From the IMG/VR virus record IMGVR_UViG_3300025098_000012, positions 62,001-126,000 of that record: a stretch of 64,000 bases of DNA. One strand, written 5' to 3'. The translations under genes were made by a program, and so were the position numbers. Numbering within the stretch: the stretch's first letter is position 1; each line of letters starts with the position of its first letter. This document shows positions 44,935-62,798 of the stretch, piece by piece. Under the pieces are notes generated by a model. That model did not search any database. It was given only the letters and a program-made list of their open reading frames with translations, and was not told the DNA's origin.

Positions 44935-44998
44935 TAACCTCTTATCTATAACCTAGTAAGGGAATGAACCTCTCCAACCACTCCCTAATGGAGACAAC

Positions 44999-45403: not shown

Positions 45404-45568
45404 TCAACATCCTGTCAGAACCCCATCAAAAACTCTTGGGGGGATCTCGGAGTCCCTAAAAACCCATATTGAAAACGCATACAAAATGACACCCTTAATT
45501 TGAAACCCCCTTTCGTAACCCCTTATTACATTATACAAACACAACCAAATACGAGAGGTATGAATACA

Positions 45569-45937: not shown

Positions 45938-46164
45938 GTCTCTCCAGAGGGGGGGGTCTTATATATGAGCGTTTTTGAAAAAGCGATGTTGGATAAGTGA
46001 TCTCATATATTATTTGAGTTTGGATTTTTTGGGTTGATTTTCTAACCCCCTTTTTGAAGCGAAAGAGGAATATGCGAGCAATGACGGACTGGTGGAACTG
46101 TTGTGTGCATCATGGGTAGATTTGTAACCCCTTATTTATAGACTCTTGAAAGGAGAACCATATT

Positions 46165-46767
46165 ATGAAATGGACAAAGATGGAGGCGATTGAGTCTCGC
46201 CAACAAGAAACGCTAGTGAAGAGAATGGGAGAGGTTCAACAAGACCCTCCGTATCCTTTGAGGGATATAACCTATGTGTACAAGAATGAGACTAGTTGTT
46301 CGTATGGTACACATTCTGGTCGCATAGAGCGTTGGTACTTTAAAGGGGATCGGTTACAGGATCGCCACTCGATGTATCGTTTATGGATTTACAAAGATGG
46401 AGGGGAGGTGTCTTTCTTTGATAGCTTTTACAAGCTCACCTACTGTAAGGATTGGGTTGAGCATGACTTAAGAGAGGGAGACTTATTAAGGTTCTCCCAT
46501 TTCAACGAGGGGTTTTCGCCTCATGGTACGGTGTACCGAGTGCAGTTGGACAAGTACCCTCACCTCACCTATGACGATGTTCTCAACTGGGTCTTAGCGA
46601 AAGAGAAGGCTTTGATGGGATATAGGGGTCAATACATGGAAGTGTATGGTGGTGATAACCCTAGAGTTGAGTTTTTCCATCATGTTTTAAAGAGGGTAGC
46701 TAAGGTCAAGCATATGGATTTAGTGGACGAAGTAAACGAGTGGGGATCAAATCTTATAAAGGCATAG
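46165..46767 (+). CDS. Hypothetical protein
   Basis: Motif plus SD AAAGGAGA. Confidence 0.75.
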   Translation: MKWTKMEAIESRQQETLVKRMGEVQQDPPYPLRDITYVYKNETSCSYGTHSGRIERWYFKGDRLQDRHSMYRLWIYKDGGEVSFFDSFYKLTYCKDWVEHDLREGDLLRFSHFNEGFSPHGTVYRVQLDKYPHLTYDDVLNWVLAKEKALMGYRGQYMEVYGGDNPRVEFFHHVLKRVAKVKHMDLVDEVNEWGSNLIKA

Positions 46768-46839
46768 TGTCATTTATTTTAGAATAGCATACGAAGTAGT
46801 AACCCCTTATTTATTAACTCTTGAAAGGAGAACATTAGT

Positions 46840-49350: not shown

Positions 49351-49707
49351 ATGTCTATAACAGAAAAGAAGAATGACAGACGAGTTTGGTCAGAAGGCTT
49401 TGTTTTAGCCTATGATGGATTGACTATAGAAGATCGCTATCAGAGTCTGATCTTAGGTTTAAGTGAAGCAGGCTTCGTCAAACAGGACTATACCTCTTAC
49501 TCTCCATTGAGTAAGGTGACTGATCTACAGCTAGACGGTATCATTGTTCGTCTTTATCTAGTAGAGCTGAACAATGATACAGTGATTTGTTATCGTGTGG
49601 GCTTAGAGGGTAGGATGGATAGTGATGACACCGACACTATATTTAGGCTTGGCTTAGACACGATATGGGTGGACATTCGTAGGGTTTGGGTAGGCTCAAA
49701 GTTATAG
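49351..49707 (+). CDS. Member of the IR.VW paralogue family
   Basis: KKNDRRVW...LSEAGF...DIRRVW. Confidence 0.7.
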   Translation: MSITEKKNDRRVWSEGFVLAYDGLTIEDRYQSLILGLSEAGFVKQDYTSYSPLSKVTDLQLDGIIVRLYLVELNNDTVICYRVGLEGRMDSDDTDTIFRLGLDTIWVDIRRVWVGSKL

Positions 49708-49777
49708 TTTTTCTATATGTGGATTATATGGTGAATAGCATAGGTGCAAAAAATAATTTTTCTAGGAGTATGTCGCC

Positions 49778-50083
49778 ATGTCCGAGTCTATGAAAAACGC
49801 TCTTGAGTGGGGTTTTAAGATACTGTCTGTTTTCTTGATCCCTGTAATCATTTACCTCTTTAACATGAGTACGAGTTTGAAACTGATGGAACTGAAATCG
49901 GAGTCTCAGACACGCACTATTGAAAAGTTAGAGGGCAAGATTGAGCGTATTGAAGAGGATTTAAATCAAGTTCAACTTAATAGCCAAGAGCTTCGTCAAA
50001 TGAGAACGGATTTAAATCAACAGAACGCTATGATGCGAGAGGTTTATCAGTGGGTTCTTCGCCAACCAGGTAGAAACCCATGA
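49778..50083 (+). CDS. Single-TM coiled-coil protein (possible lysis-associated)
   Basis: N-terminal TM then heptads; late-type motif upstream. Confidence 0.65.
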   Translation: MSESMKNALEWGFKILSVFLIPVIIYLFNMSTSLKLMELKSESQTRTIEKLEGKIERIEEDLNQVQLNSQELRQMRTDLNQQNAMMREVYQWVLRQPGRNP

Positions 50084-50439
50084 AAAATTTAGCTTTAGTT
50101 ATCGTCATCCTAAGTTTCTTTTTGATGAGTGGGGTGGGGATGGAGAGCAGGGGGTCAACAGAAAATGTTGACAATGTGCTTGAAACGGATAATGAGGTGG
50201 TACAAGTAGATAGTGTAGCAGTTGAGCAAGCCGAGATTATCTCTGAAATGAGATGTCAAGTGAGTGAGCTACACTATATGACTTGCCGAATACACCGTAT
50301 GCTTAAAAGCACAGGAGACAATGATGTCAGAAGAGAATGTAAACCAAGAGACTACCGAGAATGCCAACCAACCTCAAGAAGTGGGGAAGCTCACAGAGGA
50401 GGAAATGGCAACCATCTCACAATTGAGGCAGAACGCTAA
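50080..50439 (+). CDS. Secreted/membrane-anchored protein
   Basis: Signal-like N-terminus; ATGA coupling. Confidence 0.6.
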   Translation: MKNLALVIVILSFFLMSGVGMESRGSTENVDNVLETDNEVVQVDSVAVEQAEIISEMRCQVSELHYMTCRIHRMLKSTGDNDVRRECKPRDYRECQPTSRSGEAHRGGNGNHLTIEAER

Positions 50440-50656
50440 TCAGCTCCTCAATCAGCTTGGTCAGTTAGAGCTTCGTAAAACTCGTCTTGCGTTTCAGATT
50501 GAGCGTAATGAAGCACAGGCACAGCAGGTAGTAGCTTCTGCTCGTGAGCGTCTTAACATTCCAGAGACAGCCCCTTGGCAGATTCAAGAAGATGGGACAG
50601 TAGTGGCGATCCTTAACGAAGAAGCAGACATTACTGCTGACGAGGGTAGCGACTGA
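50321..50656 (+). CDS. Acidic coiled-coil protein
   Basis: SD AGGAGA; overlaps the previous ORF by about 120 nt. Confidence 0.7.
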   Translation: MMSEENVNQETTENANQPQEVGKLTEEEMATISQLRQNANQLLNQLGQLELRKTRLAFQIERNEAQAQQVVASARERLNIPETAPWQIQEDGTVVAILNEEADITADEGSD

Positions 50657-50706
50657 TCAGTTAGCTATCTCGTAGCACCCTTTTATGGGTAGCAGTAAGA
50701 TCAACG

Positions 50707-50745
50707 AAAAGAGCCTATCTTCCTTATGGGGGGATAGGCTCTTTT
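50707..50745. terminator. Bidirectional intrinsic terminator
   Basis: AAAAGAGCCTATC...GATAGGCTCTTTT between convergent genes. Confidence 0.85.
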
Positions 50746-51394
50746 AAGTCTCTGACCACCTAAAGAAGCGATCATCTTCTTTGTGGGTGATCCCTTTACG
50801 CTTCACTTTACCTGCCTTCTTGCCACGCACATAACGCTCAAAAGAGGTAAAGTGTTTACGCTCTAAGTCCGAGAGATCATCAACGGTGATTTCTTCTTCA
50901 ACTAAGAGCCAAAAGCGACTTGCCGCTTTAGCTACCCAGAAGGCATCTGCTTGGTGATTATTCCACCTCTTAGCACCTTGACCATCGGTAGCTTGTTTAG
51001 CGGCATCCACCATATCTCCTTTACCCATTTTCCAACCTTTGGGTCTATTGAGGAAAGCGGCAGCATGGGCTTTTACTTGATTGGGAGAAAGGTAAACCGT
51101 ATCGCATTTCTCAAGCATGAGTGCTTCATTACTGTAGAGGAACAGACCATACATTCCCTCTGAGAAAAGGTCATTAAAGATTGGTGATTCTATACCAACT
51201 CTTAAAGTCTCTTCTGGATGATCTGCTCTGACTTGCTGTACGATTTCTCTTAGACCTTCTCGTAGGGTGATGTAGCGTTCAACGAACATGGTTTTGGCAT
51301 CTGTTTTCATTGTACCCTTATCCAAAAAGTGTCCATCATCACGAATGAGAGTCCATCCAAAGTTTCTGAGAGAGGGGTCAAGTCCTAAAATCAT
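50744..51394 (-). CDS. ruvC: RuvC-like Holliday junction resolvase
   Basis: ILGLDPS..NFG; GIESP; VKA; ADAFWVA. Confidence 0.8.
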   Translation of the reverse strand: MILGLDPSLRNFGWTLIRDDGHFLDKGTMKTDAKTMFVERYITLREGLREIVQQVRADHPEETLRVGIESPIFNDLFSEGMYGLFLYSNEALMLEKCDTVYLSPNQVKAHAAAFLNRPKGWKMGKGDMVDAAKQATDGQGAKRWNNHQADAFWVAKAASRFWLLVEEEITVDDLSDLERKHFTSFERYVRGKKAGKVKRKGITHKEDDRFFRWSET

Positions 51395-51459
51395 TTGTAG
51401 ATCCTTTATTAAAGTCTTTATATATCTTTATATGATACCTCTTTTTAAGGAGAAAACAC

Positions 51460-52455
51460 ATGAGACATGATAACAGTTATCGTAGAGCAAAACGCTCTTA
51501 TCGTGAGGCTTCAATGAGCCGACAGGCAACAATGGAGCGTATTGCAGGGCTTGAGATGAAAGTAGCGGCGATGGAATACCAAGCAGGAATGAAAGACTCA
51601 CTTAAGGGTTTATTCCTCAAGTATGTCGCAGAGCCTCTTGATAAGTATCGCAGGCATCTTAACCTCTTTAAGATGCCTGTTGACGATCTCATGGACGATG
51701 TGATTGAGGCGATTGCACCAGAGTATGCTGAAAAACTCATGGAGGCTGAGGTAGACGCTGACTTTGAAGAGTTTGAAGCAGGTGCTAAACTCCGACAAGA
51801 AGAGAGAGCACATGGTCAATCAAAGTTCCCCCCTCGTGGTAAGTCTCCCGAATTCTATGAGGGATATGGTTGGGGCGACAAAAATGATGGACCAGTTCCA
51901 AGAGAGGTAAAGAAGCGTATCATTCAAGAAGCCGCTCAAGAACACAGCAAGAAGGTTACCGAGAGAGCTTTGAAAAAAGTTCTTAATGTAATCAACCCTG
52001 TTGAGATTATCAAACACGCTTACCACATCGTCAAGAAGCATGGCTGGGATCCTCATGCTGAGGAGATTTGGTATAAGAAATGGCCTAAGCGTCTGTTTAA
52101 GGTTGTTCTAATGGCTATCGGCATGGCTTTTGTAGAAGCGATTGAACACTATGTCTTGCCTGCAACAATGGTTAAGATCACAGGCAATCCTGCTTGGTGG
52201 GGTCTTGCTTCTGTACCACTCCTTGAGATCATCTTACCTATCGTTCTTGCTTACTTCAAGGGAGCTAAAGGCGATGCTGTTGAGGAGCCTGGACACCTTG
52301 ATTGGTACGAAGAGAACTATGGAGAAATCGAGGAAGTTCTTGACGATAATGTCTTTGAAGATGATGATGATGATAGCCGAGTAGCGAGCTATCGTCCTCG
52401 TGGTCGCAGAGCGAGCTATCGTGATCTAGCCCTCAAGTTTAACTACAACCTTTAA
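51460..52455 (+). CDS. Probable virion-packaged protein with hydrophobic segments
   Basis: ERIAGLE N-terminal motif; RVAS/RRAS repeats; two hydrophobic stretches. Confidence 0.65.
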   Translation: MRHDNSYRRAKRSYREASMSRQATMERIAGLEMKVAAMEYQAGMKDSLKGLFLKYVAEPLDKYRRHLNLFKMPVDDLMDDVIEAIAPEYAEKLMEAEVDADFEEFEAGAKLRQEERAHGQSKFPPRGKSPEFYEGYGWGDKNDGPVPREVKKRIIQEAAQEHSKKVTERALKKVLNVINPVEIIKHAYHIVKKHGWDPHAEEIWYKKWPKRLFKVVLMAIGMAFVEAIEHYVLPATMVKITGNPAWWGLASVPLLEIILPIVLAYFKGAKGDAVEEPGHLDWYEENYGEIEEVLDDNVFEDDDDDSRVASYRPRGRRASYRDLALKFNYNL

Positions 52456-52466
52456 GGAGAACCCCT

Positions 52467-52790
52467 ATGAGAAGGTCAGCACAACAGACCATCCGTAATC
52501 TTGAGCAACGCATTGCTCATCTTGAAAACCGATCTGCAAGCAGTTCCGATTTAAGCTCTTTGGTCGAAGCAATAGAGGCTCTTGACTCAAACATTCACAA
52601 ACTTGAGAGATCGTTTGATGATTGGTCTACCGATGCAAGTGGTTCTGGAAGAAGCCTACCACCTTCTTTTCGAGCAGGTGATATAGAGAAGGTTTATGGC
52701 ACTCTCGATGATCTGATTGAGATGAAGGATAGACTTTCTGAGGCACATCGTCTACTGCTCAAAATAAAAAGACATGACGAACTAGGGTAA
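52467..52790 (+). CDS. MRRSA..LEQRIA.LE leader protein
   Basis: N-terminus matches 62799-63200. Confidence 0.75.
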   Translation: MRRSAQQTIRNLEQRIAHLENRSASSSDLSSLVEAIEALDSNIHKLERSFDDWSTDASGSGRSLPPSFRAGDIEKVYGTLDDLIEMKDRLSEAHRLLLKIKRHDELG

Positions 52791-53228
52791 GACGCAGAGT
52801 CCTCGACTCACATTGTGGATGACAGGGAAGCATTTCCCACCTGCCACAATGACCGTACCCAACATAGATGGGTCTTTGGGGTGAACCACATTATCAGTGG
52901 TAATCACCTCATCTATGCCTAGATCATTCAGCCTATGTTCTGCATCGGTGAATGAGCCTTGTTTTATGCCCCATTGCTCTTTTTCACTACGAGTTAAGGC
53001 AAACCCTAGCATAGCCTCTATAACTTCGTTTACAGAGGCTTCTATACCCCATGTGAGTACCGACTCTCTATTAGAAGGTTGTTCTACCCATTTGAGTAGT
53101 TCATCTCCTTTAGGAGCACCTACAAGTAAAGGCATACATTTAGGGGGGACCTCAACCTCTAAGAACAATGGTGTCTTGCCCTTCACTTTTAATTCTAAGA
53201 TTTCAATCATCATCGTCCTCGTTTTCAT
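52782..53228 (-). CDS. Hypothetical protein
   Basis: Operon member. Confidence 0.6.
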   Translation of the reverse strand: MKTRTMMIEILELKVKGKTPLFLEVEVPPKCMPLLVGAPKGDELLKWVEQPSNRESVLTWGIEASVNEVIEAMLGFALTRSEKEQWGIKQGSFTDAEHRLNDLGIDEVITTDNVVHPKDPSMLGTVIVAGGKCFPVIHNVSRGLCVLP

Positions 53229-53604
53229 CTGTACTATCTGCGAGTACCCATAACAGAGCGGCTACATCGGGGTACTTACCCGCTATCTTACCCATGTCGC
53301 CCTCATTGATGAGAGCATCAAACTCAAACTCGAACTCTTCTTTGATTTCTTGCTCGTTTTTATCGGGCTTAAAAAACGGACAGGTGTTTGGCACAGAGGG
53401 GTCGCATATAACACCGTCCCACTCTTTAGGCTTATCTGCATCTTGTAAGCATACATAAAAAAGGGGATCGTTAGCGTTCCCCTTCACTTGTCCAGAATGA
53501 GAACAGTTGCAAGGCTTCTTCGACCCACCATTACGAATGGCTTTCTGAAGCAGTCGATGTTTAACTTGCTTGAGTTTATGTCTTACAGCACCTTGTTTCT
53601 TCAT
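53203..53604 (-). CDS. Cys-rich hypothetical protein
   Basis: PCNC..C..C..CPFF. Confidence 0.7.
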   Translation of the reverse strand: MKKQGAVRHKLKQVKHRLLQKAIRNGGSKKPCNCSHSGQVKGNANDPLFYVCLQDADKPKEWDGVICDPSVPNTCPFFKPDKNEQEIKEEFEFEFDALINEGDMGKIAGKYPDVAALLWVLADSTDENEDDDD

Positions 53605-54221
53605 TACTTTATTCTCTTTAAGGTTGCACCGTTCTTACTAGGTGTGATCTTATAGCCTATATCACAGTTATCTGCGATGGTCGGATCATGTGTAATACAC
53701 AATATATCCATATCTAACCGTTGGCAGAGGACTTTTAGAAAATCGACTAAGATTTCGACCCGATTTTCGTCTACAGCAGGGAATGTTTCATCAAGAATGA
53801 GGACAGGTCTTAGGTTTCTCTTGAGGATAAGGGAAATCCTCAGCAAGAGGCTTTGTATTGTGGTGACAGCTCCACCGAAAGCATCTAACCCATCACCCTC
53901 AATCTCAAGCCCATCTTGACCCTTAAAGGTGGTTTTGAGATTGACTGCTACCTTACCCCTTACCTTTGTTATTTCGGCTGTTAGCCCGACCTCTTGGTCG
54001 GGGAATATAGCCTTCAACCCTTCTTCTAAGAGGGAGATATAGGTAGATACCCCTCGCTCCACCTCATCTTGAGCGAGAGTATCAAGGATAACTCCAGCTT
54101 CCGTCTTTTTGTCCTTATCAAGCTCAAGGAAAGCGATCTCGGTTTCGAGATCGTCTATGCGTTTTTCACACGACTCCTTGAGCGTTTTTAATCGGTAAAA
54201 TCGGGAAGCGAGATCATTCAT
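53604..54221 (-). CDS. Rad50/SbcC/SMC-type ATPase, C-terminal half only
   Basis: Coiled coil; signature FGGA; Walker B ILDETF; ITHD; no Walker A. Confidence 0.8.
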   Translation of the reverse strand: MNDLASRFYRLKTLKESCEKRIDDLETEIAFLELDKDKKTEAGVILDTLAQDEVERGVSTYISLLEEGLKAIFPDQEVGLTAEITKVRGKVAVNLKTTFKGQDGLEIEGDGLDAFGGAVTTIQSLLLRISLILKRNLRPVLILDETFPAVDENRVEILVDFLKVLCQRLDMDILCITHDPTIADNCDIGYKITPSKNGATLKRIK

Positions 54222-54225
54222 TACA

Positions 54226-55431
54226 TTAAAGCATCCAACCTATAATAGAAACGGTCTGTACTCCAGAGTCTTGATCGGACTTGAAAAGCATATAACCCTT
54301 CTTGCCCTCACGAGTACATCCAAATACGATGTTATCATTATAGATTTCTACAGCTTTTTTGATCGAAAGATAGTTGAAATCGAAAGTGGCAATGTCATTG
54401 CCTTCACCAGCTTCTTTCAAACGAGTCGCATACATCAAGTTAGAGAGGTCAGTGATCTCTTCGAGTGGCTTCTCTGCATCCTCGAATGGAGGTACTTCGA
54501 GGTTATATGAGAGCGTCTTACTGTTAGACGAGTTCATCTCAAGACTAGGGGGTAATAAAGCCTCATCTTCGGGGTCTTTGAATGTGATTTTATAGTTGGT
54601 CTTATCGGCAAACGCTGACAAGAATGTAAGCCCATTCATAAAGTTATCCTTAGACAACCTCCAAACCCTACGAGGTGTCCAGTTAAACGCATCAGCATAT
54701 TGTTGTGTGATGGGAGGGTAGGTGTACGGTAGATCCATTACAGCGAATAACGCACCGTCCTCTGCCTTGAAGAATGTTGCTTGACCACCACTAAGGACTT
54801 CAACCACATTCCCTTCATATGATTTGAGGAACTTCATCAGTGGTGCGATGTCTTTATAATGGATCTTTACATCCATCCCTTGAAGGTCATCGTGCCGAGA
54901 CATATTAAGCATATACCCATCACAGGCAATCGCTTTGCCACCCTCGATCAAGATCATTGCTAGTTCTGGTCTACGACTGTCATCTTGTGATACATATTGC
55001 CTATTGGTATTAAGCGTATCATAAAGGATAGTAGCAGAAATCTCTCCGACCTTAGTTGCTTGTCCGAACTTCTCGACCCAAGGAGGGAAGGCTTCGGGAT
55101 CTAATGAGACAGTGGTGGCTTCACCCTCACTACCCTTTAAGGATACTTCTTTTTCCTCATCGTTGTACTCAATCTCAACGACACCTGTCATAACATTAGT
55201 CGCTGTGATCAAACGCTTACCCTCGATAGAAAAAGACCCTTTATCTTGAACAGTAGCACCGATGACAGGGATCTTTGAAAACTGACGAGGAGGAGAACAA
55301 GCCATGACACTCACACCTGCTTCTTCGGCTGTGAAGATAAAGTGTGATGTGATGTCTTGGTTTGTACCCAAAGTGTTTTGAGCGATTGATAGGGTTTCTT
55401 TTAAATCCTGTGCTGAGACTGTAATCTTCAT
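54226..55431 (-). CDS. dnaN: DNA polymerase III beta sliding-clamp-like protein
   Basis: MKITV...L...L; SQDDSRRPEL..I....ACDGYML resembles DnaN. Confidence 0.75.
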   Translation of the reverse strand: MKITVSAQDLKETLSIAQNTLGTNQDITSHFIFTAEEAGVSVMACSPPRQFSKIPVIGATVQDKGSFSIEGKRLITATNVMTGVVEIEYNDEEKEVSLKGSEGEATTVSLDPEAFPPWVEKFGQATKVGEISATILYDTLNTNRQYVSQDDSRRPELAMILIEGGKAIACDGYMLNMSRHDDLQGMDVKIHYKDIAPLMKFLKSYEGNVVEVLSGGQATFFKAEDGALFAVMDLPYTYPPITQQYADAFNWTPRRVWRLSKDNFMNGLTFLSAFADKTNYKITFKDPEDEALLPPSLEMNSSNSKTLSYNLEVPPFEDAEKPLEEITDLSNLMYATRLKEAGEGNDIATFDFNYLSIKKAVEIYNDNIVFGCTREGKKGYMLFKSDQDSGVQTVSIIGWML

Positions 55432-55691
55432 AGACTGTCTACTCTACTTTCGATTCTAGTGATGACTTGCTCTGCATCCAACAGAGCTTCGTTAAGTTTA
55501 GTGATTGCCTCTTGCCTTTCAGCTTTAAGGCGATTGATTTCATCTTCAAGTGTGTCGGGGTTAATACCCCTTTCAACCAACCTTTTGTCAAGTTCCAAGA
55601 GACTTGATCTAGCGGCTTCTAGCTTACCGAGCAGACGCTCCCTTCGTCTTTCAATGTCGATTTTTTTATTCACGAGTTGTTCAAGATCCAT
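55428..55691 (-). CDS. Coiled-coil protein
   Basis: Heptad pattern; first gene of the clamp operon. Confidence 0.7.
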   Translation of the reverse strand: MDLEQLVNKKIDIERRRERLLGKLEAARSSLLELDKRLVERGINPDTLEDEINRLKAERQEAITKLNEALLDAEQVITRIESRVDSL

Positions 55692-55734
55692 TTGAACTTT
55701 CCTTTCGTAATGTGGTTATCAACCATTATATGAT

Positions 55735-56709
55735 TTACTTCATATTGAGGTTGATAATCCCCCCTCCTTGTTCAGTGGGGTCGGGAGACTTTGTTTTTCC
55801 TAGACCACGCTTGGCCGCGTTTCGCTTCTTTTGAGCTTGACGCTCTTCACAAATGTTCTCGAACTTACACCAAGTACAATGCTTCGGGATTGGGTTAGGT
55901 TCAAAGACTCCCCTATGAATAGCACGATTGGTTTCAATCGCTTCTTTACCCAACCTACGAATGTCGTCATCCGTAATAGACACTTCTACAAATCCAGTCC
56001 AATCAGCGTCTTTGTCAGCAAAGTGCTTTTCGGGTGGGTTTGATCGAGGATACCTAAAATAAAAGAACCCAAGTCTATCTGGTACTTTCCCATACTGTAA
56101 TCTAAAACAAAGAGCATACCACCGAAGCTGATCTTCGTCTTCATACTTCATTGGAGTAGATGCGTTCTTACCATCAAGGATATGAACCTTGCCCTCCGAG
56201 TCTCGATATACAAGGTCGGCAATACCACATACATTAAAGTATTTGTTCATAGATGGGGTCATACGCAACTCAGACTTGGCGTAAGGACCGAGAAATCTAT
56301 GCTCTTTCAAAATCTCAAGGAAGTTCTGAGCACCTCTTTGGCAGATGTCCATTGCTTCTTCTCTAGTCATATATGACCAAATCACATAGTGTCTCTTCTC
56401 TGCTTTGGCGAACGCTTGGTCTACAACTTCCTTGATCTTTGTCTGTATCGTCTTAGGGTCACGATACAGTTCATGGTCGTATATTTCCTCTACCACAGTT
56501 GATAGGACTGTACCCATAAGTTGATGATGCTCCGAGTCTTTTGACTCATCTGGTAAAGGTTTTCTTTTCCCCTTACCTGCTCCAAGATCATGGTCGGGAT
56601 GTCCTTTATGCCATAGATACTGCTGAGGACACGCTCTCATCATTTTCAAGTGAGACCAGTATATGTTTCTCATGGGATCTTCCAATGCTTCGGTGTTAGG
56701 TTCACCCAT
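55735..56709 (-). CDS. PD-(D/E)XK nuclease (RecB/AddB/Cas4-like) with Fe-S cysteines
   Basis: ACP; GIADLV..ILDGK; QLRWY; CTWCKFENIC. Confidence 0.85.
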   Translation of the reverse strand: MGEPNTEALEDPMRNIYWSHLKMMRACPQQYLWHKGHPDHDLGAGKGKRKPLPDESKDSEHHQLMGTVLSTVVEEIYDHELYRDPKTIQTKIKEVVDQAFAKAEKRHYVIWSYMTREEAMDICQRGAQNFLEILKEHRFLGPYAKSELRMTPSMNKYFNVCGIADLVYRDSEGKVHILDGKNASTPMKYEDEDQLRWYALCFRLQYGKVPDRLGFFYFRYPRSNPPEKHFADKDADWTGFVEVSITDDDIRRLGKEAIETNRAIHRGVFEPNPIPKHCTWCKFENICEERQAQKKRNAAKRGLGKTKSPDPTEQGGGIINLNMK

Positions 56710-56811
56710 ATTGTACCTCCTATCTAGTTAAAATTGACGACCTCCTCCTTATATGTTTGTAATCCTTTTATGACCCCACTAAACATATATACTCATACAT
56801 ATGGAGGTCTT

Positions 56812-57696
56812 ATGTTAGACAGAGTAGTACAACGACACATGGTTAGGCTTGCTTGCCAGGTAGCTTATGAGCAAACACCTAACTTGAAGAAAGCACACGC
56901 TTCGGATTTATCTCTCGAATCTATCCAAGTTATAGCCAAGCACTTAACTGCAAATAGCCGACAAGACTTTACGCAGAGGAAGGCTTTCTTCTCTATAGTC
57001 AAAAAGGTTAAGCAACTCATCGACCTCTTTAAGAAATCACCTCAAGCGTGGGATAAGTTCAAGGCTATGTTAGGTATTACTTCTAGTGGAGTGGCGATGA
57101 TTAAAGAAATCGACACAAAGCTCGGTAATCTTCTTGAAGAGGGGAAGAAGAAGCTCGCTCAGTTATCTAAAAGAGTATGGAGTGAAATACCCATACTTAA
57201 ATTGATAGGTGAGGTTCTTGAAGAAAAGAACAGATGGGAAGTAGCATTAGAGAAAGCAAAAAAGTTTGTACCCGAAAAGGTCTTAAATGCGTTTAAAGCG
57301 ATTGAAACTCGTGCTTCATCAATAGGTGAGTACTTAGATGACCTATTAAGCAAGTCTAAGACCCTAAAAGCATTATCTGCACCAATCAAAATCTATCTAT
57401 TCTTTCAGATATGGGATTGGTTTGCTGACTTTGACTTTAGGGTCGTGGTGGCAGGAATTCTCGGCACTATTGAGTTCAAGGACTTGATCGCTCTTTTACC
57501 TTCTGAGGGCATTGAGGTCATCCTTGAACTTGTACTACCCCCACCTGCCAATGGAGCGTTAGCAAAGCTCATTATTGGGGTAGGTGCTACCTCTACCTTT
57601 GCCTTGATTATGGTGCTAGAGATCGAATACTTGAAGGGTGTTTACAAAGTAAACAACACCAAAGACCTCTTAGTAAAGCTAGAGGCTAATGGCTAA
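56812..57696 (+). CDS. Helical protein with hydrophobic C-terminus, probable virion component
   Basis: SD GGAGG; RVVQRH..RLA N-terminus. Confidence 0.65.
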   Translation: MLDRVVQRHMVRLACQVAYEQTPNLKKAHASDLSLESIQVIAKHLTANSRQDFTQRKAFFSIVKKVKQLIDLFKKSPQAWDKFKAMLGITSSGVAMIKEIDTKLGNLLEEGKKKLAQLSKRVWSEIPILKLIGEVLEEKNRWEVALEKAKKFVPEKVLNAFKAIETRASSIGEYLDDLLSKSKTLKALSAPIKIYLFFQIWDWFADFDFRVVVAGILGTIEFKDLIALLPSEGIEVILELVLPPPANGALAKLIIGVGATSTFALIMVLEIEYLKGVYKVNNTKDLLVKLEANG

Positions 57697-57698
57697 TC

Positions 57699-58925
57699 TT
57701 ACTTAAAGAGATCATCAAGCTCGTCCATAGCCGCTTGACCATCATCACTAAGTTTGCTTGATGCTTCGGCATTGATTTCGGGTTCATCTTCCTTCTTCTT
57801 GGAAGTGAGATAAACACGCACTTGACCAAACATCACATCAAGCCAATTTTCGGGTAAGAGCTTTCGGAAGCCATCAAGACCTTGACCTTTATGTTCTGTG
57901 CCTGTGTTTGGATTAGCCCAAGAGTACCAAGCACCACCCTTCTTCACGACACCGACAGAAATAGCAAGATCAAGCACAGTACGCTCATTATCTACACCAA
58001 TCCCATTCATAAGGTAGAACTGAGACTCATGCTTGTAAGCGTCTGACACCTTACACTTATCGAGTGTAGCACGAACGATGTTGCCCTTAACGGTATCAAT
58101 CATCTTGTTCTGTAGACCATCCCACTCTTTACCTCGATCTTTACCGATCACACGAAGCATGATCTTGAGGCTTGAGTAGTAAGTCCACGCTTGACCACCT
58201 TGTGGTTTACGAGTCGGTCCGCCACCAAAACCACCCATACCACCAATCGCTTCACGCAACTGAGAAATCCCGATGACCCCTGTATTCGAGTCTGCAATCA
58301 CACGCTTAAATAAAGGTAGGAATTGCGACCATTGACGAGCGAGAAGTCCGACAGCCGCTTGATCACCTGCTTCCTTTTGGAACATCTTTTCGGGAACACC
58401 TGCACCCACAGAGTCAACCACGATCAGATCGACTCCTGCTGAGGCGAACTTGACCATGAGCTTGAAGCCTTGTTCAAGGGTTTCGGGTTGTAGGAGCATG
58501 AACTTGCTTTTATCAGTGACAGGTACACCGAGCATTTGAGCGTAGCGAGGCTCAACTTCATTTTCCCAGTCAATGTAGACGCAAGTACCACCCTCCTCGC
58601 TACAGACCGAAGCGGCTGTCTGTAAAGCGATAGTGGTTTTACCTGCACCTGCAAGTCCATAGATGTTGGTGATGCGTCCACGAGGTATGCCTGGACAGGG
58701 GCGAACACCTTGAGCGTTCTCTTTACCTCCGATGAGATAGTCGAGAGAAACAGAACCTGTGCTGATATGAGCCATAGACTTTGAGAGAGAATCGAGATCA
58801 AGCTCCACAAGAGCCGAGTCTTTCTGACCCTTTTCAGCTTCGTTGAGGACACCTGCGAGATCGACACCTTTTAAGGCCGACTTCACCTTTGAAGATTTTG
58901 ACTTTGATGTTTTGGCTTTAGCCAT
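57699..58925 (-). CDS. recA: RecA/UvsX recombinase
   Basis: ISTGS..LD; GIPRGRIT.IYG..GAGKTT; YID.E; IVVDSV; ISQLR; KGGAWYS. Confidence 0.95.
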   Translation of the reverse strand: MAKAKTSKSKSSKVKSALKGVDLAGVLNEAEKGQKDSALVELDLDSLSKSMAHISTGSVSLDYLIGGKENAQGVRPCPGIPRGRITNIYGLAGAGKTTIALQTAASVCSEEGGTCVYIDWENEVEPRYAQMLGVPVTDKSKFMLLQPETLEQGFKLMVKFASAGVDLIVVDSVGAGVPEKMFQKEAGDQAAVGLLARQWSQFLPLFKRVIADSNTGVIGISQLREAIGGMGGFGGGPTRKPQGGQAWTYYSSLKIMLRVIGKDRGKEWDGLQNKMIDTVKGNIVRATLDKCKVSDAYKHESQFYLMNGIGVDNERTVLDLAISVGVVKKGGAWYSWANPNTGTEHKGQGLDGFRKLLPENWLDVMFGQVRVYLTSKKKEDEPEINAEASSKLSDDGQAAMDELDDLFK

Positions 58926-59038
58926 AAACGCACTCCTTAATGATGAGGTTAATAGAACGACTTCAAGACCCTTATATGATCTTCTCATTTATAGTCTATT
59001 TATAATTTTTATTTCTATGTGAGAGGAGATCCAAAAAC

Positions 59039-59371
59039 ATGATTTACAACACTTTAGCACACATTGGAGATACGATCCCTTGTCAAATTGCTTGGCTCGG
59101 ATCTGATCGTAAACCTCAAGAGGTTCAGAATGTAGAGGCGACCCTCTTTCACTATGTAGAGGATGTACGCACAGTATTGAGTGGTCCGAACGCAATGGTA
59201 GCTACAGATCAAGCTCATCGCTTCGTGTATCGCTTTACCATACCAGATAATGTTTTAGGACAAACTATATTTGTAGAATTTAAAGCAGAACTAGTGGCTG
59301 ATAACACACTCATTTATGGCGAACAAACCGTTTCAGTCTCTTCAAGAGACACTTTCATTGAGGTGGTGTAG
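59039..59371 (+). CDS. Ig-like virion protein
   Basis: Beta-strand pattern; late-type motif upstream. Confidence 0.6.
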   Translation: MIYNTLAHIGDTIPCQIAWLGSDRKPQEVQNVEATLFHYVEDVRTVLSGPNAMVATDQAHRFVYRFTIPDNVLGQTIFVEFKAELVADNTLIYGEQTVSVSSRDTFIEVV

Positions 59372-59373
59372 TC

Positions 59374-59694
59374 ATGGCAGTTATTTTTGAACAGCGTACA
59401 CAGTTGGGGCCGAATGATTTGAGAGTAGAAATCTATGACAGTCAAGGAGATGGGTTTGACCCATACTTGATTACCTATGGTTTTTACGGAGAGGATCATA
59501 CTAGAGGGGAGTGGGAAGTTGGTTTGGGAGGTCGCTCACCTGTGAGAGAGGAAGCAGGCAAATACTATGTAGGTGAAATGTTATCGGCAGGGTTTATACC
59601 AGGATCTTACTTTGTTCGTTGGGTTATAAAGCGAACTGAGACATCCCCTCTTGAAGTAATCAAAAAACAAGAGTTCGCCTTGATTGGATACTGA
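59374..59694 (+). CDS. Ig-like virion protein
   Basis: GKYY...PGSYFVRW. Confidence 0.6.
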   Translation: MAVIFEQRTQLGPNDLRVEIYDSQGDGFDPYLITYGFYGEDHTRGEWEVGLGGRSPVREEAGKYYVGEMLSAGFIPGSYFVRWVIKRTETSPLEVIKKQEFALIGY

Positions 59695-59696
59695 AT

Positions 59697-59912
59697 ATGA
59701 AAACTATTTTACTGCTTGCCATATCATTAGCTTTTTACACTTGCGATCAGTCTGAACCTTTCGTTGAAGATAATCGCACAGAATGTGAAAAGGCTTTAGA
59801 CTATATACAAGAATGTGTTGGATATAGACCTTACCTTAGAACCTGCTCGGTTGAAGATGCTGAAAAGATCCTCTCTACACCTTGTGAAAACATTAAGGAC
59901 TTGTGGAGATGA
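59697..59912 (+). CDS. Small Cys-rich lipoprotein-like protein
   Basis: MKTILLLAISLAFYTC; four further Cys. Confidence 0.65.
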   Translation: MKTILLLAISLAFYTCDQSEPFVEDNRTECEKALDYIQECVGYRPYLRTCSVEDAEKILSTPCENIKDLWR

Positions 59913-59915
59913 GAT

Positions 59916-60794
59916 ATGGCTATAAAATATGATGTAACCATGAAAGAACGATACTTAGCTGTCGTCCTTCTTGACATAATAGGCAGTACAGCATTTGTTC
60001 AGAGGAACGGAGCTGTGGTTGCCGCGAAATGGTTTCAAGTACATGACCGTCTTGCTCGGTCACTTGTGTATAAGCACAGTGGAAGAGAGATTGATCGGTC
60101 TGATGGATTTCTTTTGTCTTTTGATCGAATCATTGATGCTGTTAACTTTGGGTTAGCGTATCAACGAACAGTACCTAAAAAAACCAACCTACAAACCCGT
60201 ATAGGCATCCATTGGGGAAGGGTCATCGAAGTAAAGCAAGATGATGTGTTCGTTGGTGCAGGAGCTAAGAGAGTTGAACTTGAAGGTCTAGCTAAGAACA
60301 TCGCCGCTCGAACGATGAGTCTTTGCCAAGCAGGGCAGGTACTTCTTACTAAAGAGGCCATGTCAGCAACAAGAAATCGTACATCACACAATCTACCCAA
60401 AGATGCGAGGTATGTCTGTGTTGGGATGTACAAGTTCAAAGGTGTAAGTAAGCCACAAGAGATATACGCTGTAGGTGAAACGATACAATCATTACAGCCA
60501 CCTAAAGGGTCGGACAAAGTTAAACGACTCGGAGGTCCTAAGTACATCCGTAAGAGAGCTAGGGATCGAAAGTTTCTCGATTGGGTTTCCTATATCTTTT
60601 GGAGGTTAGGGTTTTTAGCAACACTCTTTTGGATTTGGGTCATTTTTCAGATCTCATTAGTACCCATGACAAGAACTTGGATAGGTCTGCCTTACCATAT
60701 GCCTCGATACGATGCTTTCATTGAGTATGTTGTGGACTCCTACAACTCTTTAACGAATCAAAAAAGAAGCCCTAAAGAACGGAGGCGAAGATGA
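59916..60794 (+). CDS. Class III nucleotide (adenylate/guanylate-type) cyclase with C-terminal TM
   Basis: VLLDIIGST; SDGFL; RIGIHWG; NIAAR; FKGV; TM helix near C-terminus. Confidence 0.85.
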   Translation: MAIKYDVTMKERYLAVVLLDIIGSTAFVQRNGAVVAAKWFQVHDRLARSLVYKHSGREIDRSDGFLLSFDRIIDAVNFGLAYQRTVPKKTNLQTRIGIHWGRVIEVKQDDVFVGAGAKRVELEGLAKNIAARTMSLCQAGQVLLTKEAMSATRNRTSHNLPKDARYVCVGMYKFKGVSKPQEIYAVGETIQSLQPPKGSDKVKRLGGPKYIRKRARDRKFLDWVSYIFWRLGFLATLFWIWVIFQISLVPMTRTWIGLPYHMPRYDAFIEYVVDSYNSLTNQKRSPKERRRR

Positions 60795-61309
60795 ACCAAA
60801 CAAATAAACAATTTACACAGTCCGAGAAAGCAAAAAGAGGGTGGTGGGCTTCAGTAGTCTTTATGTTCCTTATCTGTGTTCTGATCTACTTTCTCTCTAC
60901 CCATGAGATCGTAGAGAAGAATAGAGATATATTGATCGGGATCATAGGTATGCTTACTGGTAGTATCTCGTCCATGTTAGCTATAGCGAGTGGAAGAGAT
61001 CCTTCTGAAGTAGAAGAACTCAAAGACAAGCTCGCTTCAGCCAATGGGGATAGGGAAGCGTTAATCGCTCGTCTTAGAGATGCACAGATACAGATGCAAC
61101 TACTTAGAGAACAAATCTTTGAGCTTCAATCTGCTGTGATAGATAAGTTGTCCGTATTTCAAGGGCAGACAGTTATTAAGACTAAGACTGAGGAACAGGT
61201 AAAACTCAAAGGTGTTGTCAGTCAATGGATCGACCCGAAGAAGAAATCAGACGATGAAGAAGATGATGAAAAAGTAGAGATCACTTTCGAGGATGGGGAT
61301 GATACTTAA
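60791..61309 (+). CDS. Two-TM plus coiled-coil membrane protein (holin-like)
   Basis: TM-NRDIL-TM; ATGA-coupled to the cyclase. Confidence 0.65.
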   Translation: MNQTNKQFTQSEKAKRGWWASVVFMFLICVLIYFLSTHEIVEKNRDILIGIIGMLTGSISSMLAIASGRDPSEVEELKDKLASANGDREALIARLRDAQIQMQLLREQIFELQSAVIDKLSVFQGQTVIKTKTEEQVKLKGVVSQWIDPKKKSDDEEDDEKVEITFEDGDDT

Positions 61310-61360
61310 TAAGTCCTTTATGATCTCCCTATAGGTAAAGCATTTATATGGGAGGTCATT

Positions 61361-62737
61361 ATGGCACAGCATGGTTGGTACGACAGTAGAAGTCCTTATC
61401 CAGTCCCACCAAGAAATACAAGTGCTGTCTCCCCTTTCGCTAGGGGTGAGATAGATGTCCATTGGGATAACCCCTCTATCTTACATGGTAATGAGGGTTG
61501 GATTATTCGAGGTGTGAACATCTACAGATCGGGCAACTCTGATCGCGGTCCTTATCGTAGGGTGAACATCACTCCTATTGGGGGAACGATCTATAGAGAT
61601 CGGATCGACACATGGGCTGTCAACGATGAAGTCATCACAGCAGATAAGTGGATTTCCAAAGGTGATCAAGGTGAAGATCCTTATCGCTTCCAAGTAGAGT
61701 ATCCCATAGCTCGTCAAAATAGTATCAATGATCCTGCTGACTCTCCGAGAGATGTAGTGGTAATGATTAACGGTGTAATCGTACCTACATCGAGAGTGCT
61801 TGGTGAGTTTGGTGAAGTAACTTTATTCTATGCAGGCAGAGCCATACCCGATGCGATCACTTTAACAGAAGATAGTTTACCTCCTCCTATAGATGACAAT
61901 ACAGTGGTCACGATCAGTTATATTGCTTATGATCCAGAGAGTCGTTTAAGGATTGGCACTGATAAGCGAGATTTCTATCGGGTAGTCACAGTAGCAGAAG
62001 ATCCTAGAACTGGCACATTACATGAAACTCCTTTAGAGCATTGTAAACCATTTTCGGATCGTGAGCTTGAGCGTGTAGATTATATGTGGAGAGAAGGTAT
62101 TCGCAGAAACAACTGGATACTTGAACAGGGAGGTGAGCGAGTTAAGTTATTTACTCGCAGGATAGCAGGTATTCCTTGTTATTGTACCTCCTTCGACAAA
62201 GAGACTCTTAAATATGCGAAGCAACCCGACAGTCTTTGTACTATCTGTTTCGGTACAGGCATTAAGGGTGGGTATGATGGCCCTTACGACATCATAGTCG
62301 GCCCTAATGACAGTGAGCGTAGGATTTCTCAAGAGGATCGAGGTAGACGCAAGGAACATTCATATGAAGTATGGATCGGTCCAAGTCCTATCGTGAGTCA
62401 AAAAGACTTTATCGTTAAACCTAATAATGAACGGTACTCCTGTGGTGCAGTTAATATGCCATCCAATAGGGGTAATGTTTTACAACAGCATTTCAATATA
62501 GCGTATCTTGATAGTGGCGACATACGATATAGATTCCCTATTGAGGGTGTTCCTGTATCATGGCCAGAGACTCGTTATGGGTATTGGCCTCAGAGAGATA
62601 CCTACACAGCTCGTGGTGATGCTGTTTATCCTGTTACACCCGACAGTGCTTATCCTATGGATTCAGACAAGGCTACTGTATCTAATGCGTTGGAGAAGCG
62701 AGGTCGTACTGCAACTTGGGAGAATCAGAACTATTAA
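61361..62737 (+). CDS. Probable head-completion/neck virion protein
   Basis: FN3-like VHW...NIYRS; CYC...CTICFGTG..GGY. Confidence 0.6.
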   Translation: MAQHGWYDSRSPYPVPPRNTSAVSPFARGEIDVHWDNPSILHGNEGWIIRGVNIYRSGNSDRGPYRRVNITPIGGTIYRDRIDTWAVNDEVITADKWISKGDQGEDPYRFQVEYPIARQNSINDPADSPRDVVVMINGVIVPTSRVLGEFGEVTLFYAGRAIPDAITLTEDSLPPPIDDNTVVTISYIAYDPESRLRIGTDKRDFYRVVTVAEDPRTGTLHETPLEHCKPFSDRELERVDYMWREGIRRNNWILEQGGERVKLFTRRIAGIPCYCTSFDKETLKYAKQPDSLCTICFGTGIKGGYDGPYDIIVGPNDSERRISQEDRGRRKEHSYEVWIGPSPIVSQKDFIVKPNNERYSCGAVNMPSNRGNVLQQHFNIAYLDSGDIRYRFPIEGVPVSWPETRYGYWPQRDTYTARGDAVYPVTPDSAYPMDSDKATVSNALEKRGRTATWENQNY

Positions 62738-62798
62738 TAGTTTATTTATCCCTATCAATAAGTGGTCATTCTAACCTTAACCAAATGGAGAACTCCCT

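What the first reader, a model, noticed from the sequence alone, without database searches (positions are those of the whole stretch)
49702..62749. Three upstream motif classes sort genes by function
Seen: the GTAACCCC motif marks small accessory genes; TCATATAA precedes ruvC, the clamp operon, the nuclease (variant) and recA; TWATAR-N5-TTAT precedes virion-type genes. In 49.8-63.2 kb the middle-type genes are on - and the late-type genes on +, with back-to-back motifs at 51.4, 56.75 and 58.98 kb. Inference: an early/middle/late programme using non-sigma70 promoters.
Basis: partly seen in the sequence, partly recalled or inferred. Interest (0 to 1): 0.6.

Follow-up and report, generated by a model that had tools for sequence, protein, structure and literature searches.

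The report
Three promoter classes in giant phage
An uncultured giant phage marks its small accessory genes, its DNA-replication genes and its virion genes with three different short upstream signals that look like three promoter classes, yet no RNA polymerase gene of its own can be found, so what reads them is unknown.

Summary
The window lies in a 226.7-kb fragment of an uncultured phage whose complete relative is 375.7 kb. Unbiased k-mer enrichment of upstream regions recovers three motifs besides the ribosome-binding site.
- Class 1: yGTAACCCCTTATyTATA, 44 sites, 0 in shuffles.
- Class 2: TCATATAA, 8 nt, nothing conserved at -35.
- Class 3: T(A/T)(A/G)TAGTTnnTTTATA, 46 sites against about 2 in shuffles.

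Nearly all class 1 and class 3 sites, and about two thirds of class 2 sites, lie between genes, point at the next gene and start 36-94 nt before its start codon.

In 49.7-62.8 kb, four class 2 sites on the - strand (ruvC, clamp operon, nuclease, recA) alternate with six class 3 sites on the + strand. The two classes abut or interleave at 51.4, 56.75 and 58.98 kb. All are conserved in relatives while their flanks drift.

Genome-wide, 9 of 11 DNA-metabolism genes follow class 2 and 6 of 6 virion or lysis genes follow class 3. Class 1 sits before small unknown genes.

These are three promoter classes that are not sigma-70-like in build. Timing is inferred, not shown. No RNA polymerase gene was found, even in the complete relative. 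The phage does encode NusG-like and sigma-region-4-like proteins. I favour a redirected host polymerase; a cryptic phage polymerase is the main rival.

The parts
49702..49718 (+). Class 3 site, 76 nt before the 101-aa spanin-like gene (49778-50083)
   Evidence: PWM score 18.0. Conserved in relatives. Weak Rz-like spanin hit, E = 1.4e-4.
50744..51394 (-). RuvC-like resolvase gene
   Evidence: phrog_159, E = 4e-16.
51395..51411 (+). Class 3 variant (TTGTAG...TTTAT), 65 nt before the 331-aa gene. It lies in the ruvC leader.
   Evidence: PWM score 16.6. Conserved as TTTGTAG-N4-TTTAT in nine relatives.
51428..51435 (-). Class 2 site (TCATATAA), 41 nt before ruvC
   Evidence: Kept in 8 of 9 relatives.
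51460..52790 (+). 331-aa and 107-aa genes of unknown function behind the class 3 variant
   Evidence: No Pfam or PHROG hit. The AlphaFold2 model is all-helical with pLDDT 55, too poor to search.
52782..55691 (-). Clamp operon: 87-aa gene, 401-aa processivity-factor-like gene (54226-55431), 205-aa ATPase, then 133-aa and 143-aa genes
   Evidence: phrog_947, E = 1e-19, and phrog_15167. Gene calls.
55726..55733 (-). Class 2 site, 42 nt before the first gene of the clamp operon
   Evidence: The sequence AATCATATAA is invariant in ten relatives although there are indels downstream.
55735..56709 (-). PD-(D/E)XK nuclease gene
   Evidence: PF12705, E = 1.4e-19.
56749..56756 (-). Class 2 variant (ACATATAA), 47 nt before the nuclease gene
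   Evidence: Invariant in ten relatives.
56757..56773 (+). Class 3 variant abutting the class 2 variant, 55 nt before the 294-aa gene (56812-57696)
   Evidence: Below the PWM threshold, but conserved as TTGTA(G/A)-N4-TTTAT in relatives.
57699..58925 (-). RecA/UvsX-like recombinase. The start at 58925 is preferred over the longer frame reaching 58988.
   Evidence: PF00154, E = 7.6e-41. The ATG with AAGGAG upstream is conserved.
58972..58979 (-). Class 2 site, 54 nt before recA
   Evidence: Conserved in the 13 aligned relatives whose RecA is 86-94% identical.
58989..59005 (+). Class 3 site, 50 nt before the 59039-62737 block of genes
   Evidence: PWM score 21.9. Invariant in close relatives while the flanks vary.
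61307..61323 (+). Class 3 variant (AATAAGTCnTTTAT), 54 nt before the 458-aa gene
   Evidence: Conserved even where the upstream gene differs.
62735..62751 (+). Class 3 site, 64 nt before a 133-aa gene that belongs to a paralog family with a shared leader
   Evidence: PWM score 22.9. Footprint.
20730..46816 (.). Class 1 cluster: 28 PWM sites, both orientations, each 39-137 nt before a mostly small unknown gene. Five divergent pairs (four with exact cores).
   Evidence: 0 PWM hits in shuffles.
18927..18943 (-). Class 3 site heading the operon that holds the 3037-aa ORF (9149-18262)

Best explanation
The three motifs are three classes of phage promoters that divide the genome into transcription programmes.
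- Class 1 drives the small accessory genes and is probably early.
- Class 2 drives DNA replication, recombination and repair genes, and in the complete relative also tRNA genes. It is probably middle.
- Class 3 drives virion, packaging and lysis genes and is probably late.

Each is a single contiguous element with nothing conserved at -35. The shortest leaders, and tRNAs lying 11 and 23 nt behind class 2 sites, place the transcription start within about 10 nt after the motif. Classes 1 and 3 are 16-17-mers that share their 3' half (TTATyTAT) and differ in the 5' half (GTAACCCC against TWRTAGT). This suggests one melting or -10-like element plus a class-specific element directly upstream of it.

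In 49.7-62.8 kb, class 2 units on the - strand alternate with class 3 units on the + strand. Their promoters abut or interleave, so occupation of one could exclude the other when the programme switches.

Shown: the motifs, their placement, their conservation and their link to gene function.

Inferred: the order in time, and the enzyme. I think the most likely enzyme is the host's multisubunit RNA polymerase, redirected by phage proteins. Candidates are the conserved protein with tandem sigma-region-4-like domains and the NusG-like factor encoded beside the clamp loader.
For: - Motif enrichment and unbiased recovery.
- Placement, orientation and distance.
- The same exact 17-mer occurs in 86 stretches of about 38 IMG/VR contigs.
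- All three classes persist in the collinear 375.7-kb relative, which is 66-90% identical at the DNA level, mostly 75-89%.
- Footprints: motifs are invariant while flanks vary.
- Function link: Fisher p = 0.002.
- Class 2 lies 11 and 23 nt before two tRNA genes in the relative.
- Several genes carry class 1 and class 2 in tandem, as genes expressed in two phases would.
- No -35 information, and sigma-70-like matches are depleted.
- No T7-like, beta or beta' polymerase family in this record or in a 100%-complete relative.
- No large unknown gene sits behind class 1 or class 2 that could be a non-virion polymerase.
- NusG/Spt5-like protein: profile against PDB gives Spt5 at 7.6e-6 and NusG at 8e-4 over nearly the whole length. 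By established knowledge the NusG N-terminal domain binds the beta' subunit of multisubunit polymerases (PMC2995049, PMC7819879).
- Sigma-region-4-like protein: PF04545 at 24.8 bits; AlphaFold2 pLDDT 83; the best structural matches are sigma region 4 of ECF sigmas, Z 8-9.5, rmsd 1.4-2.5 A.
- Homologues of both proteins occur on contigs of up to 375 kb.
Against: - There are no RNA data, so starts and timing are untested.
- Early promoters must be read by whatever is present at injection, and class 1 looks nothing like a bipartite sigma-70 promoter. A host-only route therefore needs an unusual host sigma or an injected factor.
- The sigma-like protein has no region 2, so it is not a conventional sigma. 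Its nearest upstream promoter is class 3, with a class 1 site 388 nt further up. It is therefore not clearly an early product.
- A 17-nt contiguous, nearly invariant promoter is the hallmark of single-subunit phage polymerases.
- Class 1 is absent from relatives whose RecA is 74-82% identical. Such fast turnover fits a phage-encoded reader.
- The PF00940 search had no positive control.
- Many giant late proteins have no detectable family.
Confidence: 0.6

Rival explanations
1. A cryptic phage-encoded RNA polymerase reads the 16-17-nt class 1 promoters, and perhaps class 3. It could be a very divergent single-subunit enzyme or a new two-barrel enzyme. It would be hidden in one of the giant late virion proteins and injected with the DNA, as in N4, phiKZ or crAss-like phages.
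For: - The promoters are a contiguous, almost invariant 17-mer ending in TATA and containing TAACCC. From my own recollection of the T3 and T7 promoters, they resemble those.
- Class 1 is lineage-specific.
- Early genes need a reader at the moment of injection.
- Many late ORFs of 800-3037 aa have no family or PDB match.
- The PF00940 search lacks a positive control.
Against: - PF00940, PF00562 and PF00623 are blank in this record and in the complete relative.
- No protein of 400 aa or more combines T7-type motifs B and C, apart from the family A DNA polymerase, which carries motif B. No NADFDGD-like motif appears in a plausible context.
- The 3037-aa protein reads as a beta-rich structural protein.
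- The genome encodes a NusG-like factor, which points to a multisubunit (host) enzyme.
Confidence: 0.3
2. The classes are regulons rather than time classes. All three are read at once by one enzyme and differ in strength or in a bound regulator, so there is no early, middle and late order.
For: - No timing data exist.
- Classes 1 and 3 share their 3' half.
- Class 1 and class 2 occur in tandem before the same genes.
- The operon with the clamp loader, the NusG-like gene and the sigma-4-like gene lies behind both class 3 and class 1.
Against: - The split into accessory, replication and virion genes is the classical temporal split of lytic phages, for example phiKZ and AR9 (PMC7598289).
- Abutting divergent class 2 and class 3 promoters fit a switch.
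Confidence: 0.15
3. The motifs are not promoters. They would be operators, RNA-level signals such as processing sites or translation enhancers, or remnants of duplicated intergenic cassettes.
For: - Class 1 units often share downstream leader pieces: a stem-loop, a CA-rich tract and ACTCTTGAAAGGAGA.
- The small paralog family carries a whole shared leader.
- Both point to some spread by duplication.
Against: - The motifs are conserved where the leaders are not.
- They occur before unrelated genes and before tRNAs.
- They form divergent pairs in bidirectional gaps.
- No other candidate promoter signal is enriched upstream.
Confidence: 0.07

Closest known systems
Phage T4 early, middle and late programme (host polymerase; MotA/AsiA; gp55/gp33/sliding clamp). 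Comparison from my own knowledge.
   Same: - Three promoter classes sort accessory, replication and virion genes.
- Some genes carry two classes in tandem.
- One class is a bare 8-nt AT-rich element with no -35: T4 late TATAAATA against TCATATAA here.
- The phage has its own clamp and clamp loader.
   Different: - Here the 8-nt class precedes replication genes, not virion genes.
- The presumed early class is not sigma-70-like.
- No gp55, MotA or AsiA homologue was identified or could be tested.
- The upstream class-specific elements touch the AT-rich element instead of lying at -30.
T7/T3/SP6-type single-subunit polymerase promoters. Comparison from my own knowledge.
   Same: - Contiguous, nearly invariant block of 17 nt ending in TATA close to the inferred start.
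- A TAACCC core as in T3.
- A structured leader often follows.
   Different: - No T7-like polymerase gene was detected in this record or in a complete relative.
- The block precedes the accessory genes of a 375-kb myovirus-like phage.
- Two different 5' halves share one 3' half.
phiKZ/AR9 jumbo phages with virion and non-virion multisubunit polymerases (PMC7598289, PMC5312081)
   Same: - Jumbo phage with a sharply conserved motif before presumed early operons.
- Some genes carry two promoter types.
   Different: - Those early motifs are about 10 nt, AT-rich and centred at -10, and their middle and late promoters cannot be predicted from sequence (PMC7598289). Here all three classes are predictable, and the early one is 17 nt with a GC-rich half.
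- Split beta and beta' genes were not found.
Bacillus phage SPO1 sigma cascade. Comparison from my own knowledge.
   Same: Phage-encoded sigma-related proteins could retarget the host polymerase to successive promoter classes.
   Different: - SPO1 promoters are bipartite (-35 and -10), and its factors are full sigmas.
- The protein here has only region-4-like domains.

Membership tests
Sigma-70-type bipartite promoter | A -35 hexamer lies 16-18 bp upstream of a -10 hexamer, and the spacer is not conserved | tested here: not met
   Information content is about 0 upstream of all three motifs. Consensus matches in 46-64 kb number 20 against 34 +/- 6 in shuffles.
T7-group single-subunit polymerase promoter | Contiguous conserved block of about 17-23 bp that ends at the start site | tested here: inconclusive
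   The block is present for classes 1 and 3. The start site is only bounded by the shortest leaders: 39 nt from the first base of the motif to the ATG.
T7-group single-subunit polymerase promoter | The genome encodes a T7-like RNA polymerase (PF00940) | tested here: not met
   Blank in this record and in the 100%-complete relative G001. Caveat: the search had no positive control. Motif scans were also negative.
T4-type late promoter | A single AT-rich octamer of about 8 bp near -10, with no -35 | tested here: met
   Class 2 is the octamer alone, 58 sites in two genomes. It lies 11 nt before a tRNA gene.
T4-type late promoter | It precedes late (virion) genes and depends on gp55, gp33 and the clamp | tested here: not met
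   Class 2 precedes replication and recombination genes. Homologues of gp55 and gp33 were not tested because no family model was at hand.
phiKZ/AR9-type two-polymerase jumbo phage | Split beta- and beta'-like polymerase genes | tested here: not met
   PF00562 and PF00623 are blank at E <= 1 in G000 and G001, while all 14 control genomes gave hits.
N4-type virion polymerase system | Early promoters are DNA hairpins, and a giant virion protein carries a polymerase domain | tested here: not met
   The class 1 motif holds no inverted repeat. The 3037-aa late ORF has no Pfam, PHROG or PDB hit and no convincing polymerase motif.
Sigma-70 family factor (the 188-aa protein) | Region 2 (core binding and -10 recognition) together with region 4 | tested here: not met
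   Only region 4 is detected (PF04545, 24.8 bits). The fold matches sigma region 4 domains at Z 8-9.5. The second half is another helix-turn-helix. No region 2 is present.
NusG/Spt5 family (the 172-aa protein) | An NGN domain followed by a KOW domain | tested here: met
   A profile of 28 homologues hits Spt5 at 7.6e-6 and Thermotoga NusG at 8e-4 over residues 3-139. KOW scores 20.1 bits, below the cut-off of 22.3.

The most novel reading that the evidence does not exclude
A clade of uncultured phages of up to about 375 kb reads 16-17-nt, T7-like promoters with machinery that no current family model recognises. One possibility is a new RNA polymerase hidden among its giant injected virion proteins. 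The other is a protein with only sigma-region-4-like domains that takes over the host core enzyme and reads an element placed directly against the -10-like TATA element.
Probability: 0.25. Interest if true: 0.8.

Novelty: new variant of a known kind. Interest (0 to 1): 0.5.

Why it matters
Temporal promoter classes are textbook phage biology. For giant uncultured phages, however, the transcription programme is usually unreadable from sequence. Here all three classes can be read directly, which gives three things:
- an expression-class label for some hundred transcription units of unknown genes, in this genome and in its relatives;
- defined DNA templates with which to look for the unknown reader;
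- a test case, because no polymerase gene can be found. It either shows a new way of redirecting a host polymerase (a sigma-region-4-only protein plus a NusG paralogue) or points to an unrecognised polymerase family.

Tried and rejected
- Megablast of the stretch against known phages: no match. The only protein-level relative there is an unannotated 485-kb metagenomic phage that lacks the class 1 motif.
- Polymerase hunt. PF00940, PF00562, PF00623 and PF04542 gave nothing.
- Pfam or PHROG scans of about 60 proteins, including the 3037-, 2368-, 2181-, 2084-, 2060-, 1875- and 1774-aa ORFs, gave no polymerase.
- The 846-aa candidate is a Ser/Gly/Thr-rich repeat protein. The 2181-aa ORF shows weak helicase motifs.
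- phmmer against PDB was blank for three giants. Motif regexes found nothing convincing. The ESM Atlas gave no lead for the 1035-aa protein.
- An ECF-sigma reading of class 1 (GTAAC as -35, GT 16 nt later) was rejected. In nine sites the start codon lies only 39-42 nt from the motif, which would put the transcription start inside the ribosome-binding site.
- An archaeal TATA/BRE reading was rejected for the same reason, and because the phage has bacterial-type RecA, NusG and sigma-4-like genes.
- The fold of the 331-aa + strand protein had pLDDT 55 and was not searched.
- The literature holds no paper with the class 1 sequence.
- Searches were input slips of mine.

Full report
WHAT THE SEQUENCE IS

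The window is bases 62,001-126,000 of a 226,698-bp IMG/VR virus record. The record is linear, 43% G+C, and 73% complete by CheckV's estimate. It has no nucleotide match among deposited phages. Its RecA and clamp find only an unannotated 485-kb metagenomic phage at 51% and 23% identity.

A collinear relative, G001, is 375,691 bp and rated 100% complete. Its DNA is 66-90% identical to this record, mostly 75-89%, and its two ends overlap. Our record therefore lacks roughly 130 kb of that genome.

I called 271 genes with a codon-usage and ribosome-binding-site heuristic. Start codons are preceded by a strong AAGGAGA.

Yes.

I made an unbiased test with no motif given in advance. It measured the enrichment of all 6-8-mers in the oriented upstream regions of the whole record. 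Besides the ribosome-binding site it returned exactly three families. Aligning the sites gives the full motifs.

- Class 1 is a contiguous 17-18-mer, yGTAACCCCTTAT(C/T)TATA. Most positions are 90-100% conserved and nothing is conserved upstream.
- Class 2 is the octamer TCATATAA alone. Pooling 58 intergenic sites from the two genomes shows no information at -35.
- Class 3 is T(A/T)(A/G)TAGTT-nn-TTTAT(A).
- Classes 1 and 3 share their 3' half (TTATyTAT) and differ in the 5' half.

PLACEMENT

Weight-matrix scans of the record gave the following.

- Class 1: 44 sites, 43 outside genes, 40 with a same-strand start codon 39-137 nt downstream, none in ten shuffles.
- Class 3: 46 sites, 38 outside genes, 39 with a same-strand start within 150 nt (37 of them at 36-76 nt), 0-4 in shuffles.
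- Class 2: 25 of 45 octamers (including the ACATATAA variant) are intergenic and point at a gene within 150 nt, mostly 36-55 nt away. Only about 9% of the record is non-coding.

In bidirectional gaps the class 1 sites form divergent pairs.

THE FLAGGED STRETCH

The finding's coordinates run from a class 3 site at 49702 to one at 62735.

- The - strand carries RuvC (50744-51394), a five-gene clamp operon (52782-55691), a PD-(D/E)XK nuclease (55735-56709) and RecA/UvsX (57699-58925). Each unit is headed by class 2: at 51428, 55726, 56749 (the ACATATAA variant) and 58972.
- The + strand units are headed by class 3 or its variants: at 49702, 51395, 56757, 58989, 61307 and 62735.
- At 56.75 kb the two motifs abut. 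At 58.98 kb they are 9 nt apart, back to back. At 51.4 kb they are interleaved, each inside the other gene's leader.

CONSERVATION

The exact class 1 17-mer occurs in 86 stretches from about 38 IMG/VR contigs, many times on the large ones. G001 keeps all three classes: 67 class 1, 55 class 2 and 80 class 3 sites.

I fetched the recA neighbourhood from 38 related contigs and aligned the intergenic regions. In relatives whose RecA is 86-94% identical, every motif listed above is invariant or nearly so. The bases between and around them change, with insertions, deletions and even a different upstream gene at 61.3 kb. This is the footprint expected of functional sites.

Farther relatives, with RecA 74-82% identical, lack class 1. 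One of them, G006, keeps TCATATAA, there with a C-tract upstream, and keeps a class-3-like ATAGT-N-TTTATAG. Classes 2 and 3 are therefore older than class 1, and class 1 turns over quickly.

FUNCTION

For genes that I could name, I took the nearest upstream same-strand promoter.

- Class 2: family A DNA polymerase, two SNF2 helicases, RuvC, the clamp, the nuclease, RecA, an SbcC-like ATPase and a RecD-like helicase. That is 9 of 11 DNA-metabolism genes. The exceptions are UvrD and the clamp loader.
- Class 3: baseplate J, a tail or baseplate hub, the spanin-like gene, the terminase, the prohead protease and the portal. That is 6 of 6.
- Fisher p = 0.002.

In G001, class 3 also precedes the tail sheath and a fibre with an Mtd_N domain. 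Class 2 sits 11 and 23 nt before tRNA-Lys and tRNA-Glu.

28 of 39 well-placed class 1 sites lie at 80-110 kb of the record, which is window 18-48 kb. They stand before short unknown genes. Several genes have class 1 and class 2 in tandem.

One caveat concerns the flagged stretch. Its + strand genes have no family hits except a weak spanin-like match, and the 331-aa protein folded poorly. 'Virion-type' is therefore an extrapolation there.

WHERE TRANSCRIPTION STARTS (INFERRED)

Nine class 1 sites lie only 39-42 nt from the ATG, with the ribosome-binding site in between. A class 2 site ends 11 nt before a mature tRNA. The start must therefore lie within about 10 nt after each motif.

This excludes reading GTAAC as a -35 element with a start some 30 nt further on. 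It also excludes an archaeal TATA-box geometry.

Class 1 leaders are more structured than class 2 or class 3 leaders: mean z -1.3 against -0.2 and -0.3. This fits transcripts that begin just upstream of those hairpins.

WHO READS THE PROMOTERS?

None of the classes has a -35/-10 build. Sigma-70-type matches in 46-64 kb are fewer than in shuffles, 20 against 34 +/- 6.

I found no polymerase.

- PF00940 (T7-like), PF00562 (beta) and PF00623 (beta') are blank in this record and in the complete relative. PF04542 (sigma region 2) is blank in this record, the only place it was searched.
- The beta, beta' and sigma searches gave hits in the control genomes. The PF00940 search had no control that could give a hit.
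- Scans of about 60 proteins, including all the giant ORFs, gave no polymerase. Neither did PDB sequence searches, motif expressions or the Atlas.
- In G001, every large unknown protein lies behind class 3. No large unknown gene lies behind class 1 or class 2 that could be a non-virion polymerase.

What I did find lies outside the window, at 162.2-164.5 kb of the record. It is one operon with three genes.

- A DnaX-like clamp loader.
- A 172-aa NusG/Spt5-like protein. A profile against PDB gives Spt5 at 7.6e-6 and NusG at 8e-4 over nearly its whole length. JGI names many of its homologues NusG.
- A 188-aa protein made of two sigma-region-4-like helix-turn-helix domains. PF04545 scores 24.8 bits against a cut-off of 24.1. 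The AlphaFold2 model has pLDDT 83. Its first domain matches region 4 of ECF sigmas at Z 8-9.5 and rmsd 1.4-2.5 A. It has no region 2.

Homologues of both small proteins occur on contigs of up to 375 kb.

NusG-family proteins bind the beta' clamp of multisubunit polymerases (PMC2995049, PMC7819879). A phage copy therefore argues that the host enzyme transcribes at least part of this genome.

MOST LIKELY MECHANISM AND ITS WEAK POINT

I favour a T4- or SPO1-like scheme. The host core enzyme would be steered to successive promoter classes by phage proteins. The shared TTATyTAT or TCATATAA part would serve as the -10-like melting element. The adjoining 8 nt of classes 1 and 3 would be read by a class-specific factor, and the tandem sigma-4-like protein is a candidate for that role.

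The weak point is class 1. If it is early, something present at injection must read a 17-nt contiguous signal that looks like a T7/T3 promoter and not like a host promoter. Its quick turnover among relatives also suggests a phage-encoded reader.

A cryptic virion-borne polymerase therefore remains a serious rival, which I put at about 0.3. That the sites are regulons without temporal order (0.15), or are not promoters at all (0.07), is less likely.

COMPARISON WITH KNOWN SYSTEMS

- The logic is that of T4: three classes, tandem promoters, and one octamer-only class. But the octamer class here serves replication genes, and the early class is not sigma-70-like.
- The form of classes 1 and 3 is that of T7-group promoters, but the defining polymerase gene was sought and not found.
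- Jumbo phages of the phiKZ and AR9 kind have an AT-rich early motif of about 10 nt, and their middle and late promoters cannot be predicted from sequence (PMC7598289). Their split beta and beta' genes are absent here.
- I therefore file this as a new variant of a known kind, not as a member of any of these systems.

VERDICT

The timing and the enzyme remain open.

Noticed in passing
G000 162212-164522 (- strand; outside the window; locus L121 1198-3097 and L011 13329-14522): One operon holds a DnaX-like clamp loader (397 aa), a NusG/Spt5-like protein (172 aa) and a protein of two sigma-region-4-like domains (188 aa). Homologues of both small proteins occur on contigs of up to 375 kb.
   Followed up: yes
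window 63207-64000 and beyond (G000 125207-128329, - strand): The terminase large subunit is interrupted by an intein with a LAGLIDADG endonuclease (PF14528, PF14890; 1040 aa). The orthologue in the relative is 1361 aa, so it may hold more inserted sequence.
   Followed up: partly
window 9149-18262 (- strand): A 3037-aa ORF behind a class 3 site has no Pfam, PHROG or PDB match. G+C skew is -0.43 at 16-18 kb. Its composition looks beta-rich and structural.
   Followed up: partly
window 62799-63200; also G000 136483, 154027, 164598, 167394, 212356 and 219145: A family of small paralogous genes, each beginning MRR and each with a class 3 site and a shared leader of about 45 nt (…CATAAGTGATCTCTTTAACC…).
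   Followed up: no
window 20700-46900 (class 1 leaders): Many class 1 units carry a G+C-rich stem-loop about 10 nt after the motif, then a CA-rich tract (CCAACCAAYCACTC) before the ribosome-binding site. Others share ACTCTTGAAAGGAGA. Mean folding z is -1.3, against about -0.3 for the other classes.
   Followed up: partly
window 26505-27254 (- strand): A 249-aa protein is made of four or more helix-turn-helix repeats, with many HTH families at 1e-8 to 1e-17. A second HTH protein of 143 aa lies at G000 147236-147667.
   Followed up: no
G001 173376-180000 (loci L108 and L109): A cluster of nine tRNA genes lies in the part of the genome that this record lacks. TCATATAA sits 11 nt before tRNA-Lys and 23 nt before tRNA-Glu.
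   Followed up: partly
G000 170944-173990 (- strand): A prohead-protease-like gene (479 aa) is followed by a 522-aa, highly codon-biased protein with an EF-hand calcium-binding motif (PF13202, 1.7e-9). It may be a head protein.
   Followed up: no
G000 37500-43700 and G001 282500-295000: Several tandem paralogues of a gene of about 400 aa, 65-80% identical at the DNA level, lie behind class 2 sites.
   Followed up: no
G000 155359-161904 (- strand) and 214552-216282 (- strand): A 2181-aa late protein shows weak DEAD/SNF2 helicase motifs; from my own knowledge it recalls the packaged anti-restriction protein DarB. A 576-aa late protein has a WGR domain (7e-13).
   Followed up: no
window 57699-58988 and 56734-57696: The longest frames over-call two starts. 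Conserved ATG and ribosome-binding sites put recA at 58925 and the 294-aa gene at 56812. The promoter motifs then lie outside the genes.
   Followed up: yes
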